Part shown: positions 7,456-50,420 of the stretch, piece after piece
How positions within the stretch are numbered: the stretch's first letter is position 1
Layout of the letters: each line of letters starts with the position of its first letter
From: Saccostrea cucullata
Taxonomy: Eukaryota
Direction: 5' to 3'
Assembly: GCF_032062105.1 (NCBI RefSeq)
Contig: NW_026929284.1
Location: 186,001-250,000, forward strand
Length of the DNA: 64,000 bases
Program-made: the position numbers and the translations under genes
The notes under the pieces: generated by a model
Seen by the model: only the letters and a program-made list of their open reading frames with translations
What the model was told of the DNA's origin: nothing
Databases searched by the model: none

Positions 7456-10400
7456 TTATTGTCGCTGATAGAGATACAGGTAGGCCAGATCGCGTGGAGG
7501 GTGTTCAGACAAAGCCACTTTTTCGTCATTGTAGATAACCCAGCGCCCCTCCTTCTTGATGTGACAGACATAGTGGCCGACCATTGTAGAGGTTCCCATG
7601 TGGCTGATAAATGCCACCAGTTTATACTCTGTAACGAAAACATAAAATGAATAAAGTGGCAGTTAGGAAATTCAATAAGGAAAAGTTTCAGAAGCTATTT
7701 GAATTATAAGTAAAAACACTAAGAAACAATGTTGAGTTTTTATCAGTTCAAATTTTATGAAAGTTTGTACCATTATGTTTATGTCTTGATTTTTAATCCA
7801 TTACCAACACTTACTGCCTATAGACGTTTGATACATTGCCTATATGTAGACGTTTGATACATTGCCTATATGTAGACGTTTGATACATTGCCTATACGTA
7901 GACATTTGATACATTGTCTATATGTACACATTTGATACATTGCCTATATGTACACATTTGATACATTGCCTATATGTACACATTTGATACATTGCCTATA
8001 TGTACACATTTGATACATTGCCTATATGTAGACGTTTGATACATTGCCTATATGTACATGTTTGATACATTGCCTATATGTACACATTTGATACATTGCC
8101 TATATGTAGACGTTTGATACATTGCCTATATGTAGACATTTGATACATTGCCTATATGTACACGTTTGATACATTGCCTATATGTACACGTTTGATACAT
8201 TGCCTATATGTACACGTTTGATAATTGCGTATATGTACACGTTTGACACATTGCCTATATGTACACGTTTGACACATTGCCTATATGTACACGTTTGATA
8301 CACTGCCTATATGTACACGTTTGATACACTGCGTATATGTAGACGTTTGATACATTGCCTATATGTAGACGTTTGATACATTGCCTATATGTAGACGTTT
8401 GATACATTGCATATAAGTAGGCGTTTGATACATTGCCTTTATGTAGACGTTTGATACATTGCCTATATGTAGACGTTTGATACATTGCCTATATGTAGAC
8501 GTTTGATACATTGCCTATATGTAGACGTTTGATACATTGCCTATATGTAGACGTTTGATACACTGCCTATATGTAGACGTTTGATACATTGCCTATATGT
8601 AGACGTTTGATACATTGCCTATATGTAGACGTTTGATACATTGCCTATATGTAGACGTTTGATACATTGCCTATATGTAGACATTTGATACACTGCCTAT
8701 ATGTAGACATTTGATACATTGCCTATATGTAGACATTTGACTTACTGCCTTCCCCGTCCCTGTACGTTGTATTGGGTACCGTGTCTCCCCCAGCCTCTGT
8801 CTCCATAGGAGTGTCCAATTCATCAGTGTGGCTAAATATCCAATCTACTGCCCTCTCTACATTGTTATCCTTCAAAGAAACACATTCATGTCAAAATCTC
8901 CCATCATATACCTAGTGTTTTCCTTTTAATTCAAAGTAAAGGATTAGAGATGAATTGTAACAGGCTTTGAGCTGAGGTTTCTGTAGACCTCACAACAATT
9001 AAACTTTGATTTTTTAAAATTCAAAGTGGCAATTTGTCAATTGAAGTGGTCAATTTGGCCGGTAGCCGGTTCTTACGGAAAACCTGTATACCTAGTACAA
9101 AAGAATACGTAACTGGGTATTTACAACATTGTCACTTTTCAGGATTCTAATACATGTATGAGGATTACAAAGAAAAACACACACACACACACACACAAAT
9201 ATACACCTTTTGCTTGAAACTTGAATCGTAGTTCTAATATAATCATTAATCTTTGCATACATACAGTGTTTTTAAGAGCTTTGATGGCCTGGTCTCTATT
9301 AAACCCCATTGACATCACCATTCCTACTGCATCCTCATTGGGAACAAAACTTCCTGCTTTTGGTTTGCCACCAGGCGGAACAAACGGAGCGTTGAAATCT
9401 GTGTTAAAAAAACAGAAAATGAATTCTTACAGCATACATTTTCATCTGGACCTATAGTAAACATGTTTTACAAGTCTTTGTAATGGATTTCCATATCTAA
9501 ACACATAATAATAGGCATATATGTCAGATTAGGTTTTATTATTTTGTATGGAATGAGCTTAGTACCTATCCTGATCTTCCATGTGTTCCATGACCCAGTT
9601 CCTGACCGACAATGATTATGCTTTTATTATTTTAATGACCTAAGTACCTACCCTGATCTTCCATGTGTTCCATGACCCAGTTCATGGCCGGCTCCACCCC
9701 GCTGTTGTTTGTATTGAACACAGCCTTCTTACAGGCCTCTATGGGAAACCCCATCTCTACCAGCTGGGCTACCACTACTTCATCTATCTGAACTTCTGAA
9801 AAGAACAACCATATGTAACTATAATGCTCAATATTTCTTAATCACTTTACATAAAGTACATATATAAAGTACAGATAATAGTGTTTTGCAAAATACATTC
9901 TCCAATTTTAAAATGATAACATTTTAAATACAGTAAAACAAACATGCTTATAGTAAATTGGTAATTGCTACGGTATTTTAGGCCATTCAAAGTTTTTTCT
10001 AGTGTAGCATCTCCTTGGACCTTTGTTTTTGACAATCCAAATTGGGGAAAAAAAACCCAGGATTTTTAAAAAGAATATTCTGCTAAAATCTTTGAAATCT
10101 GGCTATTTCTCTGATTATTTGTCTACAACATGTCATATTGGGTATATTTTAAGCATTTAATACTTTAATTTTGCTGAAGATTAATCCCTTGAATGAACTT
10201 ATTTTTTGGGTCTCTGTTTTATTTTTTTTGATTTGTGTTTGTGTGTGATTTTTTTGTGAATAGGTAAGTAGAATTTTGAAAGCTGGGTAAGGCATTTAAC
10301 AGAAAAAAACTGGCCTTATGCTGTCCTACCCTGTGGGGCCTCAGACAATTCCTACATTTTTTGAGATGCTGTAAGTGTTGCCTTAACCTGTAGGGCCCCA

Positions 10401-47613: not shown

Positions 47614-50420
47614 ATGTCAGAGGCTCGTCCTTTTAAGATTTGGAATCATGAGCGGACTGTGAAAAAAGGAACTGTCGCATCTTCATTACAAGATTTACTC
47701 AGAAAAGGTTGATTTTTTTAGTATATCTATCTGATTCTTGATCAAGTTGGATTATGTATACCTATGAATAAGAATCTAATTAATATATGGTAACTTATCT
47801 GAGTGTCCAGATGGTAATGTATCTGTACACAAATATGATAAAACGAAGCTGTAGATTTATACTCACAGCAATCAGGTGTAAAATTTGATTGCACTACATA
47901 TATTACTCATATTAACTGACTCATAAGTAGTTTAGATATAATCAAAATATGTACTCGTAAAATTCAGACTATTTTTACCGTTATGTTCAGATCTTTGAAT
48001 TTCATATGGGGTAATTTTTTTTCAATTCATAAATAACTGTTACATTGTCTCTAAATATTTTGCAGCATATATTAATCTGATTATATTTGTAGGGAAGTCA
48101 TCACTGGGAATCCCCGAACCAGAACAAGTAACAGCAGTGTTGGAGGAAGATGGTACAGAGATTTCAGATGAAGATTACTTTGCCTTCATAAGACACAACA
48201 CCACCATCATGTTACTTAGAAATGGGCAAAAGTGGCAGCCAGTTGGAGCAGGTATAATTGTTTTACCACCATTTAAATTATCTGTGTATTATCAAGACTG
48301 TGTGACAATTTTATTTGTAAACTTTGATATAAAAAAGAGTTCAGTATCATATTTACCGGTATATTAAAGATGCATGTTTGCTTTGTTTTAGTGAGTAAAG
48401 CACTTGTAATCAAACACTAACAGTTAACTTTGTTTATTTGTAATTTTATTTTGTCCCCATATACAGTAAAACTCGGTTATAAGGAAGTCACTGGGACCTA
48501 TTAAATTACTTTGTTATAATATATCTGTAATTCATTATATCCGTATAAGGAATTTGCTAGATTCATATTGTTGACTCAAGGACCAACCTAGGGGGCGACT
48601 GAGGCGAAATAGTCGCTTTTGGGCTCCAAACTTCGCCGTACTTTATCTTGAAAGCGAAGTTTAAGTCGCCTTAACATTTGCAACCCCTTTATTAAAAATC
48701 TATTAAGAAACATGGTAGAATCATCAGTAGTTGATAAATCTTGTTTTATTACTGCTGAAATAAACCAAACAGCAGGACACTTGCACCTGTTTCGCTGCTA
48801 ATGACCAATGCATCGAATACTCTGTCGGAAATCCTCTAGATTTTACTCTTCCGGGTATGAAAAAGTCCAATTTTTACAAGTTATGCACAACCAGATGCGA
48901 AACAGCTGGTCAATTATCGATGCCATGCCAAAGATGTTGAAGATGGTTTTAGATCTTTTTATTGCCAAATAATTAATTCATGCTGTGAATACAGGCATAC
49001 TTTACTGTTAATTTGTGAAGTTATTGACCGTTTAAGAAATTACACATCCTGATATACCGAGTTCAATCAGCATGCAGTACGTAGTACATCAAAACTCTTT
49101 TCAGAAAAATTAAATGAAAACAAATTTTGAAGAGAAAATAACAAAATTATGACTATGCAATGAGCCCAAAAATTTAAAATGAAAAGATAGAATTTAATAG
49201 TTAACTGTGCATATTATGCAAGAAATGAAAAAAAAAGTCCGCACGCGCCAAGAAGTCTCCCTAAATTTCAAAACTTCTCCCTAAATTTTGGGTCTAGGTT
49301 GGTCCCTGTTGACTAATGAGATCCAAAATAACTTCGTGAATTCGCAATATCACGATATCCATGAATTTGCAATATCCATGTTCGTACTAAACGAGTTTTA
49401 CTGTATTGGAAAAATATTTTAAATTTTATCTTTTAAACAACAACAAGGAAACAAATTAACAAACTGAAATGCAAGCAACTGCATATAGTACAAATTCAAA
49501 ATTTTACAACAGTGGCTTGAAAAGGTTTTGAAGATTCTTTAGTACATCCAAAGATTTAATTTTATACAGAGAATCAGTTTGGGGGAGACGAGGTAGATAA
49601 TCTAGAGGCAGGAAGTGAGATATCAGACAGGATGAAGCAGTTAATAGCAGGCCTTCATAAAAACATCACAAGAATCATCACCCTGTCAAATGATGATCTA
49701 CAGGTAAAATTGTCAGATTGACAAAAAATGATATATAGGTCAAAATTGTCAAATCTGCAGTTCAGTAATAAAATAATCATACTTGAACTGATACTGGTAA
49801 ACTTATCAGACTGAAAAAATGTGATCCATACGTCAAAACTGTCAAATTTGCAGTTAAAATAATCACACTGTCAATTGAAACAGGTAAAATTGTCAGATTC
49901 AAATGTCAATGTGATGCTCGGGAAAATTCATCTCTGTCAAATGATGATGCATATGCACACTGTCAAGTCAATGGTGTAAATGAAACCATTACATCATTGT
50001 CACATGAAGTCATTACAATATATCAAGATGATAATTGACAACCAATCTCAGACTGTAAAATATTTTTAACTCTCATCTAATGATTCTTGAAGCTTCAATA
50101 TCATTGTGCTTATGTATTTTTTTTTTTTGGTGAAACTTATTAACATGAACAATTAATCAATATCCTAAATATTAATCAGATTTTCCCCCCCTGGATTTTT
50201 TCAGATCATTGTGGGTATGGATGTCCCAATGCTGGCTAACTTGCTGCAGGATACAGAAAATTTCGCTAAATCCATTCAGGAAGCCTGCCAGCGCCACTTA
50301 GATGAACGTAACCAGACCTCGGAGGCTATGGATCTGTTAAGACTTTATCACACCGCCCGACAGTCCAGTCCTTATGTAGAGGATACAGGTCCAAAACGTA
50401 AAAAACATGCACACACGTAA
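47614..50420 (+). CDS. DFFA: DNA fragmentation factor subunit alpha (ICAD/DFF45)-like, 4 coding exons, 200 aa
   Basis: Exons 47614-47707, 48093-48251, 49570-49703, 50205-50420 (603 nt). CIDE-N domain (RPFKIWNHERTVKKG...LEEDGTEISDEDYF...LLRNGQKW), DEVD caspase site, DFF-C-like helical region (LSNDDLQ...IQEACQRHLDER) and C-terminal basic NLS PKRKKH. Confidence 0.88.
48464..49403. mobile_element. Tc1/mariner-type MITE (TA TSD) with a nested element
   Basis: TA-CAGTAAAACTCG / CGAGTTTTACTG-TA. Confidence 0.78.
48577..49308. mobile_element. Nested TIR element with 6-bp TSD
   Basis: CAAGGACCAACCTAG / CTAGGTTGGTCCCTG; TTGACT on both flanks. Confidence 0.8.

What the first reader, a model, noticed from the sequence alone, without database searches (positions are those of the whole stretch)
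7456..50420. Two ancient head-to-head gene pairs (USP5<>CDCA3 and PEX14<>DFFA) sit side by side as one four-gene block
Seen: gene order USP5(-), CDCA3(+), PEX14(-), DFFA(+), with divergent starts in each pair and only ~3.2 kb between the CDCA3 and PEX14 stop codons. Established: in human, CDCA3/USP5 are head-to-head on 12p13 and DFFA/PEX14 are head-to-head on 1p36, and these regions are paralogous (e.g. ENO1/ENO2, CLSTN1/CLSTN3, SPSB1/SPSB2, CHD5/CHD4). Inference: both bidirectional pairs predate the protostome-deuterostome split, and this window may preserve an ancestral four-gene block that was split between ohnologous chromosomes by reciprocal loss after vertebrate genome duplication.
Basis: partly seen in the sequence, partly recalled or inferred. 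Interest (0 to 1): 0.78.

Follow-up and report, generated by a model that had tools for sequence, protein, structure and literature searches.

The report
Two old gene pairs, side by side
In this oyster, two back-to-back gene pairs that humans also have (USP5/CDCA3 and PEX14/DFFA) lie next to each other. The first pair is ancient across animals, but I found signs of the four-gene block only in molluscs, so this is a good but ordinary case of conserved gene neighbourhood.

Summary
The window comes from Saccostrea cucullata contig C11421 and carries USP5(-), CDCA3-like(+), PEX14(-) and DFFA(+), exactly within 7456-50420. All four identities pass domain, motif or database tests.

- **PEX14<>DFFA:** RNA reads show a non-coding DFFA first exon ending 162 nt from the PEX14 start codon, so the pair shares a tight bidirectional promoter.
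- **USP5<>CDCA3:** the start codons are 2.8 kb apart, and the transcription starts are not mapped.
- **USP5<>CDCA3 is ancient:** the same head-to-head arrangement is present in amphioxus, a sea star, an annelid, a nemertean and two other molluscs. Human CDCA3-USP5 is a listed divergent pair.
- **PEX14<>DFFA as an ancient pair:** this rests only on oyster plus human.
- **The four-gene block is not shown to be ancestral:**
  - Nothing of PEX14 or DFFA lies within 10 kb of CDCA3 in amphioxus, sea star, annelid or nemertean.
  - In scallop and limpet, CDCA3 and DFFA sit on different scaffolds.
  - Only two heterobranch snails have DFFA beside CDCA3, each in a different arrangement.

The best reading is two conserved bidirectional pairs on one ancient linkage group, brought or kept close within molluscs. 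The scan had not noted this block before. Interest is modest.

The parts
7456..29134 (-). USP5/USP13-type deubiquitinase gene (the single oyster copy, so a pro-orthologue of both vertebrate USP5 and USP13). ATG at 29134, stop at 7456-7458. Exons recognised: about 29134-29040; within 28658-28906 (zf-UBP_var); within 27540-27836; within 26938-27294 (zf-UBP); within 26535-26735; within 25682-25876 (Cys box GNSCYMNS); within 17826-18035; within 9635-9841 and 9142-9426 (UBA1, UBA2); 7459-7662 (His box). The middle exons were not fully mapped.
   Evidence: Pfam on exon pieces. Human USP5 zf-UBP structure match at 9e-42. Exon 1 read. One copy in the assembly.
29135..31914 (.). USP5<>CDCA3 divergent intergenic region, 2.78 kb between start codons. 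It contains a repeat copy at about 29400-29770. CpG observed/expected peaks at 30200-30400 and 31200-31600. Transcription starts are not mapped.
31915..35977 (+). CDCA3-like gene with three coding exons: 31915-32140, 33752-34012 and 35727-35977 (intron phases 1 and 1), giving 245 aa. Features: N-terminal MG, two DPRSPxxGIxRTPI motifs, RSPL/NSPR motif, and a KEN box 5 residues from the C-terminus.
   Evidence: Splice sites read. Product identical to P0051. Profile search found 751 relatives.
35978..39197 (.). Convergent (tail-to-tail) spacer of 3.2 kb between the CDCA3 and PEX14 stop codons. No recognisable gene.
   Evidence: Pfam on the longest ORF (37477-37779) gave nothing.
39198..45185 (-). 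PEX14 gene. Exon 1 is 45185-45165 (MAEEETK, donor gtaaac). Exon 2 is 42843-42757 (Pex14_N). Exon 3 is 42512-42377. Exon 4 starts at about 42283 (hydrophobic segment). Later exons lie within 40839-41057 (coiled coil), 39977-40168, 39406-39621 and 39201-39413. Stop at 39198-39200.
   Evidence: Pfam Pex14_N 1.8e-11. PEX14 structures at about 1e-8. RNA joint 42512/42757 and a loose end at 42377 that reads into exon 4. Sequence. One copy in the assembly. The exon 1 to exon 2 joint is inferred from splice signals, not seen in the rows shown.
45186..45347 (.). PEX14<>DFFA shared promoter core: 162 nt between the PEX14 ATG and the 3' end of DFFA's non-coding first exon. One CCAAT box (ATTGG at 45227). 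CpG observed/expected is 1.75 in 45200-45400.
   Evidence: RNA joint 45332->47596, seen in three raw-read RNA runs and one contig. Sequence. Motifs and CpG.
45255..50420 (+). DFFA (ICAD/DFF45-like) gene. The non-coding exon ends at 45347 (donor GTAAGA); its start is somewhere after about 45255. Coding exons: 47596-47705 (ATG 47614), 48091-48251, 49570-49703 and 50205-50420. The product is 200 aa: CIDE-N at 5-80, DEVD at 91-94, DFF-C at 94-182.
   Evidence: RNA joints 45332->47596 and 47705->48091. Product equals P0166. Pfam. DFF-C matches the human DFFA structure 1IYR at 8e-5. The D-x-x-D site is conserved in 13 DFFA sequences.

Best explanation
The window holds two conserved divergent (5'-5') gene pairs of the kind described as conserved ancestral microsyntenic pairs.

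**How each pair is held together.** The most likely reason is that both genes are driven from one short shared promoter, so a breakpoint between them would damage both.
- This is shown at sequence and RNA level for PEX14<>DFFA in the oyster (162 nt core, CCAAT box, CpG-rich).
- It is inferred for USP5<>CDCA3 from its persistence across at least six animal phyla.

**Why the two pairs sit side by side.**
- Both belong to one old linkage group. Its vertebrate descendants include 12p13, 1p36 and 3q26-29.
- They were probably already close in the common ancestor of bivalves and gastropods.
- Local inversions then rearranged them: oyster has CDCA3> <PEX14 DFFA>, Lymnaea has CDCA3> <DFFA, and another heterobranch has DFFA> CDCA3>.
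- There is no evidence that the four genes form a functional unit, or that they were contiguous in the bilaterian or pre-duplication chordate ancestor.
For: - **Gene identities:**
- **Tight PEX14<>DFFA promoter:**
- **USP5<>CDCA3 head-to-head elsewhere:**
  - B. belcheri at 1.6 kb
  - Lineus at 0.5 kb
  - Owenia at 2.8 kb
  - Asterias at 3.3 kb
  - unnamed mollusc L001/L002
  - caenogastropod-like L005
  - human, TSS distance 62 (PMC3815023 supplement)
- **Mollusc-level proximity:**
  - Lymnaea DFFA (CIDE-N plus DFF-C) is convergent with CDCA3, 0.87 kb away.
  - In heterobranch-like L004, the last DFFA exon lies 9 kb upstream of CDCA3.
- **Same linkage group:**
  - The sea star's 3' neighbour of CDCA3 is an ATP13A2-type P5B ATPase. 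Human ATP13A2 is at 1p36 (my knowledge).
  - GNB1, GNB3 and GNB4 lie at 1p36.33, 12p13.31 and 3q26.33 (PMC6952978).
- **General class:** about 600 conserved ancestral microsyntenic pairs, mostly 5'-5' (PMC3514665).
Against: - USP5<>CDCA3 is not seen within 10 kb in six other spiralian loci (Lymnaea, L003, L004, L006, L007, L008). The constraint is therefore not absolute, or transposon insertions have stretched the pair.
- Transcription starts of USP5 and CDCA3 in the oyster are unmapped. USP5 exon 1 lies in CpG-poor sequence, so a shared promoter there is not shown.
- Mollusc-level proximity needs independent losses in scallop, Lottia and a caenogastropod.
- Evidence outside CDCA3 +/-10 kb is missing, because each fetched locus was limited to 10 kb flanks.
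Confidence: 0.6

Rival explanations
1. USP5/13-CDCA3-PEX14-DFFA was one contiguous block in the bilaterian and pre-duplication chordate ancestor. The oyster preserves it, and vertebrates split it between ohnologous chromosomes (12p13 and 1p36) by reciprocal gene loss after the two genome duplications.
For: - The block exists in the oyster.
- CDCA3 is adjacent to DFFA in two heterobranch snails.
- Human 12p13 and 1p36 are paralogous (my knowledge; GNB1/GNB3 positions).
- USP5's ohnologue USP13 at 3q26 (my knowledge) fits the same paralogon.
- The sea star has a 1p36-type gene (ATP13A2-like) next to CDCA3.
Against: - There is no positive case outside molluscs.
  - The 10 kb 3' of CDCA3 holds no PEX14 or DFFA exon in amphioxus, Lineus or Owenia.
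  - In the sea star, a P5-ATPase is the only annotated gene there, and a motif scan found no PEX14 N-domain exon.
- Scallop and Lottia have CDCA3 and DFFA on different scaffolds.
- The vertebrate pattern is explained equally well by mere same-chromosome linkage.
Confidence: 0.15
2. Lineage-specific coincidence. The two pairs are each ancient, but they came to lie side by side independently in the oyster lineage, and CDCA3 and DFFA did so separately in heterobranch snails. This happened through random rearrangement within one chromosome and has no historical or functional meaning.
For: - The three mollusc arrangements all differ in order or orientation.
- The adjacency is absent in the scallop, which is closer to oysters than snails are, and in Lottia.
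- Hundreds of windows were scanned, so some chance neighbourings of conserved pairs are expected.
Against: Two independent juxtapositions of the same genes within 10 kb are improbable. My rough estimate is a few in a thousand per lineage for genes shuffled within a chromosome of about 1000 genes. This is my own estimate, not a computed test.
Confidence: 0.2

Closest known systems
Conserved ancestral microsyntenic pairs (CAMPs; Irimia et al. 2012, PMC3514665)
   Same: These are unrelated neighbouring genes kept adjacent across many animal phyla, mostly in 5'-5' orientation with short intergenic distance, and explained by shared regulation. USP5<>CDCA3 meets the paper's criterion of adjacency in four or more major lineages.
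   Different: I could not check whether either pair is already in the paper's list, because its supplement is not held. PEX14<>DFFA was confirmed in only two lineages here. A side-by-side arrangement of two such pairs is not part of that concept.
Human divergently paired genes: the CDCA3-USP5 entry (PMC3815023, supplementary file 2)
   Same: The same two genes, head-to-head. The human TSS distance is listed as 62.
   Different: In the oyster the start codons are 2.78 kb apart with a repeat insertion, and the transcription starts are unknown. The oyster USP gene is the single pro-orthologue of USP5 and USP13.
Human 1p36.22 gene order ...PGD-APITD1-CORT-DFFA-PEX14 (PMC554762)
   Same: DFFA and PEX14 are direct neighbours. 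They are divergently oriented (my knowledge).
   Different: The human pair is not in the <1 kb divergent-pair list. In the oyster the two genes share a core of at most about 160 nt.
HSPD1-HSPE1 bidirectional pair
   Same: This is the textbook case of a 5'-5' pair conserved from humans to unicellular relatives, with one bidirectional promoter (cited in PMC3514665).
   Different: Those two genes act in one complex. No functional link is known between USP5 and CDCA3, or between PEX14 and DFFA.

Membership tests
USP5/USP13 (isopeptidase T) deubiquitinases | N-terminal variant zf-UBP, followed by a canonical zf-UBP | tested here: met
   PF17807 at 4e-14 and PF02148 at 9e-14 on exon pieces. Human USP5 zf-UBP structures match at 9e-42.
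USP5/USP13 (isopeptidase T) deubiquitinases | UCH catalytic domain with Cys box and His box, and two UBA domains inserted in it | tested here: met
   UCH hits on the Cys-box exon (GNSCYMNS) and the His-box exon. UBA/UBA_7 hits on two exons that lie between them.
PEX14 peroxins | Pex14 N-terminal domain (binds PEX5 and PEX19) | tested here: met
   PF04695 at 1.8e-11. Rat and human PEX14 N-domain structures match at about 1e-8, with 24 of 30 residues identical to rat PEX14.
PEX14 peroxins | Hydrophobic membrane segment and coiled coil after the N-domain | tested here: inconclusive
   Seen by eye only, in exon translations...VLSVIALVGGLSYAAYRFYK, then a heptad-like stretch in 40839-41057. No predictor was run.
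DFFA / ICAD (DFF45) | CIDE-N domain plus the DFF-C domain that only DFFA has | tested here: met
   P0166: PF02017 at 9e-29 and PF09033 at 9e-13. The DFF-C region matches the human DFFA structure 1IYR at 8e-5.
DFFA / ICAD (DFF45) | Caspase-3 cleavage site between the domains | tested here: met
   DEVD at residues 91-94. D91 and D94 are nearly invariant in 13 mollusc and beetle DFFA sequences. This is a motif only; cleavage was not tested.
CDCA3 (Tome-1) | Sequence relationship to vertebrate CDCA3 | not tested
   There is no Pfam model and no solved structure, and no vertebrate sequence was available by reference. Indirect support comes from two sources.
- NCBI names this protein and its amphioxus, Lingula, sea-star, scallop and nemertean relatives 'cell division cycle-associated protein 3-like'.
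- The motif pattern agrees with my memory of human CDCA3.
CDCA3 (Tome-1) | N-terminal MG, paired DPRSPxxGIxRTP motifs and a C-terminal KEN box | tested here: met
   - The N-terminal MG and both DPRSP...RTP motifs are invariant in the 17 aligned sequences.
- The family has 751 profile hits, 284 of them at or below 1e-10.
- The KEN box lies within the last 10 residues in most full-length members.
CDCA3 (Tome-1) | Positional orthology: head-to-head with USP5, as in human | tested here: met
   Oyster, amphioxus, sea star, annelid and nemertean. Human is listed in PMC3815023.
Conserved ancestral microsyntenic pair (Irimia 2012 criterion: adjacency in four or more major lineages) | USP5-CDCA3 adjacency in four or more lineages | tested here: met
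   Mollusca, Nemertea, Annelida, Cephalochordata, Echinodermata and Vertebrata.
Conserved ancestral microsyntenic pair (Irimia 2012 criterion: adjacency in four or more major lineages) | PEX14-DFFA adjacency in four or more lineages | tested here: inconclusive
   - Only oyster and human were confirmed.
- Lymnaea has 4.2 kb upstream of DFFA without a PEX14 exon.
- Probable arthropod contigs are negative within 4-10 kb.
Bidirectional promoter pair (TSS less than 1 kb apart) | Oyster PEX14<>DFFA starts within 1 kb | tested here: met
   The PEX14 ATG is at 45185, and DFFA's RNA-supported first exon ends at 45347.
Bidirectional promoter pair (TSS less than 1 kb apart) | Oyster USP5<>CDCA3 starts within 1 kb | tested here: inconclusive
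   The ATGs are 2.78 kb apart.
Ancestral four-gene block | The two pairs adjacent in both a deuterostome and a non-mollusc spiralian | tested here: not met
   There is no PEX14 or DFFA exon within 10 kb 3' of CDCA3 in amphioxus, Lineus or Owenia. In the sea star the only annotated gene there is a P5-ATPase, and the motif scan found no PEX14 N-domain exon. The test is limited to +/-10 kb.

The most novel reading that the evidence does not exclude
The four genes were one contiguous block in the last common ancestor of bilaterians, or at least of chordates before the two genome duplications. On this reading the oyster is a living snapshot of it, and human 12p13 (USP5-CDCA3) and 1p36 (PEX14-DFFA) are its reciprocally pruned ohnologous remnants.
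Probability: 0.15. Interest if true: 0.5.

Novelty: new member of a known kind. Interest (0 to 1): 0.3.

Why it matters
- **CDCA3 orthology.** USP5<>CDCA3 is a clean example of a bidirectional pair kept for more than 500 million years across at least six phyla. It gives positional proof that the poorly conserved, Pfam-less invertebrate 'CDCA3-like' proteins are true CDCA3 orthologues.
- **CDCA3 family age.** The family also reaches crickets, isopods and a sponge, so it is older than its vertebrate-centred annotation suggests.
- **Shared promoter.** The oyster PEX14<>DFFA core of about 160 nt is a compact candidate for studying shared promoters.
- **Four-gene block.** If it were ancestral, the block would be a neat textbook case of reciprocal loss after genome duplication. 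Present evidence supports only the weaker, expected statement that the genes share an ancient linkage group.

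Tried and rejected
- **Pfam on CDCA3.** Scans of the exons and of the full protein gave nothing. The solved-structure search also gave nothing.
- **Searching the amphioxus genome behind locus L009 for Pex14_N.** The tool does not hold that genome.
- **DFF-C family search of the oyster's own assembly.** It missed even the window's own gene, because the domain is split by introns, so it says nothing about copy number.
- **Macro-synteny through the oyster's own assembly.** TPI1 and the P5-ATPases lie on other contigs. 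The assembly has 23,869 contigs, so this is uninformative, and I dropped it.
- **Word search with oyster DFFA.** It found molluscs and beetles but no deuterostome, so no PEX14/DFFA-centred look-up in amphioxus was possible.
- **Metagenome scan for DFFA loci.** It returned 19 loci with no PEX14, USP5 or CDCA3 exon nearby. Their organisms are unknown, so this is only a weak negative.
- **Literature.**
  - No paper holds PEX14, DFFA and 'bidirectional' or 'synteny' together.
  - The Irimia 2012 supplement is not held.
  - The head-to-head pan-cancer supplement has none of the four genes.
- **Unidentified neighbours.** The gene 3' of CDCA3 in Owenia (377 aa) and the ORFs 3' of CDCA3 in L005 have no Pfam hit and remain unidentified.
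- **Joined spliced models.** Exons were searched by reference one at a time, and the full-length products were taken from database proteins P0051 and P0166, which turned out identical to the models.

Full report
**What the window is.** The sequence is AT-rich (about 33% GC), intron-rich animal DNA without gaps. Earlier notes of the scan call the genome an oyster. The database protein identical to one gene product names Saccostrea cucullata. The window is contig C11421:186001-250000 of a 1.17-Gb, 23,869-contig assembly.

**The four genes**

*USP5, minus strand.*
- Exon translations carry the variant zf-UBP, the canonical zf-UBP, UCH with Cys box (GNSCYMNS) and His box, and two UBA domains.
- The zf-UBP exon matches human USP5 structures at 9e-42 and USP13 at 1e-37.
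- Exon 1 ([31 protein letters not shown]) puts the ATG at 29134. The stop is at 7456-7458.
- The family-specific zf-UBP_var domain hits the assembly once. The oyster gene is therefore the single pro-orthologue of vertebrate USP5 and USP13.

*CDCA3-like, plus strand.*
- Splice signals give three exons: 31915-32140, 33752-34012 and 35727-35977, with phases 1 and 1.
- Their product is letter-for-letter database protein P0051, XP_062618702.1 'cell division cycle-associated protein 3-like [Saccostrea cucullata]', 245 aa.
- It has no Pfam family and no solved relative.
- It has a sharp signature. It starts with MG and has two DPRSPxxGIxRTPI motifs, invariant in 17 aligned relatives. It also has an RSPL/NSPR motif and a KEN box five residues from the end.
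- A profile of exon 1 found 751 proteins, 284 of them at or below 1e-10.
- Named members come from amphioxus, sea stars, Lingula, Lineus, Owenia, many molluscs, crickets, isopods and the sponge Oscarella.
- I could not align it to a vertebrate CDCA3 by reference. Orthology rests on NCBI's naming, on the motif pattern (which agrees with my memory of the human protein) and on position, as set out below.

*PEX14, minus strand.*
- Exon 2 (ISTAVKFLQNPKVRKSPLQQRKAFLERKG) scores 1.8e-11 for Pex14_N. It is 24/30 identical to the rat PEX14 N-domain in the best solved-structure match.
- RNA reads join 42757 to 42512. A transcript contig runs from 42377 into the next exon.
- Exon 1 (ATG 45185, MAEEETK, donor gtaaac) is inferred from splice signals and phase.
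- Later exons line up with the hydrophobic segment, coiled coil and 'LKGLLLNRRQFPP' region known from PEX14 (by eye).
- The stop is at 39198-39200. There is one copy in the assembly.

*DFFA, plus strand.*
- The product is P0166, 'DNA fragmentation factor subunit alpha-like', 200 aa.
- It has CIDE-N (9e-29) and DFF-C (9e-13).
- A DEVD caspase-type site sits between the domains. Its two aspartates are nearly invariant in 13 DFFA sequences.
- The C-terminal domain matches the human DFFA structure.

**Head-to-head starts**
- Three poly(A) RNA-seq runs and one transcript assembly join 45332 to 47596 and 47705 to 48091.
- The contig carries TAGA between the sides of the first joint. Reading the reference, this is an 11-nt length polymorphism, and the exon ends at 45347 before a GTAAGA donor.
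- DFFA therefore has a non-coding first exon that ends 162 nt from the PEX14 start codon. Both genes must start inside, or overlap, that short interval.
- The interval holds one CCAAT box and is the only CpG-rich spot nearby, with observed/expected 1.75. This is a classic bidirectional promoter.
- For USP5<>CDCA3 the start codons are 2.78 kb apart, with a repeat copy between them. USP5 exon 1 lies in CpG-poor DNA, while 31200-31600 is CpG-rich. A USP5 leader exon near CDCA3 is possible but untested.

**Is USP5<>CDCA3 ancient? Yes.** I used CDCA3 relatives as anchors and read 10 kb on each side.

| Species or locus | Arrangement | Start-to-start distance |
|---|---|---|
| Branchiostoma belcheri | annotated USP5 (full domain set) divergent from CDCA3 | 1.6 kb |
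| Lineus longissimus | same | 0.5 kb |
| Owenia fusiformis | same | 2.8 kb |
| Asterias rubens | same | 3.3 kb |
| L001/L002 (unannotated mollusc) | same, by tblastn with the window's exons | 2.9 kb |
| L005 (caenogastropod-like) | same, by tblastn | 2.3 kb |

- Human CDCA3-USP5 is listed among divergently paired genes with a TSS distance of 62 (PMC3815023 supplement). The order GNB3, CDCA3, USP5 is shared by mammals and fish (PMC4470515).
- Six other spiralian loci show no USP5 exon within 10 kb. These are Lymnaea, two heterobranch-like, two heterodont-bivalve-like and one unplaced locus. Several are full of transposon ORFs, so the pair may be stretched or broken there.

**Is PEX14<>DFFA ancient? 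Plausible, but thinly supported.**
- Human order ...CORT-DFFA-PEX14 is documented (PMC554762). The divergent orientation is from my knowledge.
- The pair is absent from the <1 kb human list.
- Lymnaea has 4.2 kb upstream of DFFA with no PEX14 exon.
- Six DFFA-bearing metagenome contigs with 4-10 kb upstream, of unknown but probably arthropod origin, have none either.

**Is the four-gene block ancestral? Not shown.**

| Species or locus | What lies near CDCA3 |
|---|---|
| Oyster | PEX14, convergent, 3.2 kb 3' |
| Lymnaea stagnalis | DFFA, convergent, 0.87 kb 3' |
| L004 (heterobranch-like) | last DFFA exon 9 kb upstream, same strand |
| Amphioxus, Lineus | nothing called and no PEX14/DFFA exon in 10 kb |
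| Owenia | unidentified 377-aa gene |
| Asterias rubens | ATP13A2-type P5B ATPase |
| Scallop, Lottia | CDCA3 and DFFA on scaffolds of different length, hence different scaffolds |

- CDCA3 lying within 10 kb of the PEX14/DFFA pair in both a bivalve and heterobranch snails is unlikely to be two accidents. It points to proximity in their common ancestor, followed by inversions and losses.
- Outside molluscs there is no positive case.
- The sea-star neighbour (its human counterpart ATP13A2 is at 1p36, from my knowledge) and the GNB1/GNB3/GNB4 positions fit one old linkage group behind 12p13, 1p36 and 3q26-29.
- That linkage is all the vertebrate pattern requires. Reciprocal loss after duplication does not need the four genes to have been contiguous.

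**Comparison with what is known.**
- Deeply conserved, mostly 5'-5' pairs of unrelated genes are an established class, with about 600 pairs (PMC3514665).
- USP5<>CDCA3 meets that paper's four-lineage criterion. I could not see its list.
- I found no paper linking PEX14 and DFFA as a conserved pair, or describing the two pairs together.

**Verdict**
- The finding is a new, well-documented member of a known kind. Its practical value is positional evidence for CDCA3 orthology in invertebrates.

**Limits**
- Flanks were 10 kb per locus.
- Several loci are unnamed.
- The middle exons of USP5 are not fully mapped.
- There is no direct alignment to vertebrate CDCA3.
- Joined spliced models were not sent to any tool.

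Noticed in passing
L014:19119-23067 (Asterias rubens): The gene convergent with CDCA3 in the sea star is an ATP13A2-type P5B ATPase. Its human counterpart lies at 1p36 (my knowledge), with paralogues at 3q29. This is a small independent hint that the USP5-CDCA3 neighbourhood belongs to the 12p13/1p36/3q linkage group.
   Followed up: partly
window 17422-17847, 22170-22550, 24463-24645, 29530-29765: A repeat family whose ORF reads ...[16 protein letters not shown]... occurs at least four times, on both strands. Three copies are in USP5 introns and one is in the USP5-CDCA3 intergenic region.
   Followed up: no
window 41164-41980 (PEX14 intron): A tandem array of near-identical ORF-like units (…LINRSTEFHQTLQIFRTQCVDVHITGKFR…) lies on the gene's strand.
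   Followed up: no
window 43482-43678, 44664-44860, 45846-46042, 46437-46633: Short patches inside PEX14 intron 1 and DFFA intron 1 draw very deep RNA reads, with 'goes back' joints and loose ends. They look like pieces of repeats transcribed from other copies, not exons of these genes.
   Followed up: no
window 45333-45343: There is an 11-nt length polymorphism (GAAAGAGAAGT present in the reference, absent in the RNA runs) inside DFFA's non-coding first exon. Most RNA reads are only 95-99% identical to the window, as expected for a highly polymorphic oyster.
   Followed up: partly
proteins P0059, P0076, P0085, P0060: The CDCA3 N-terminal profile also hits proteins of crickets, isopods, the sponge Oscarella and an amoebozoan transcriptome. 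Some lack the C-terminal KEN box. The family, or its DPRSP..RTP motif, may be much older than bilaterians.
   Followed up: no
L011, L004, L006 (heterobranch gastropods): No USP5 exon lies within 10 kb upstream of CDCA3, while DFFA sits beside CDCA3. The otherwise ancient USP5<>CDCA3 pair may have been broken in this snail lineage.
   Followed up: partly
window 4001-4333 (-): A 111-aa open stretch rich in K/E (…KKQLEQEENKELLEKRERLLEKQF…) lies beyond the USP5 3' end. It looks like an exon of a further gene, but has no Pfam hit.
   Followed up: partly
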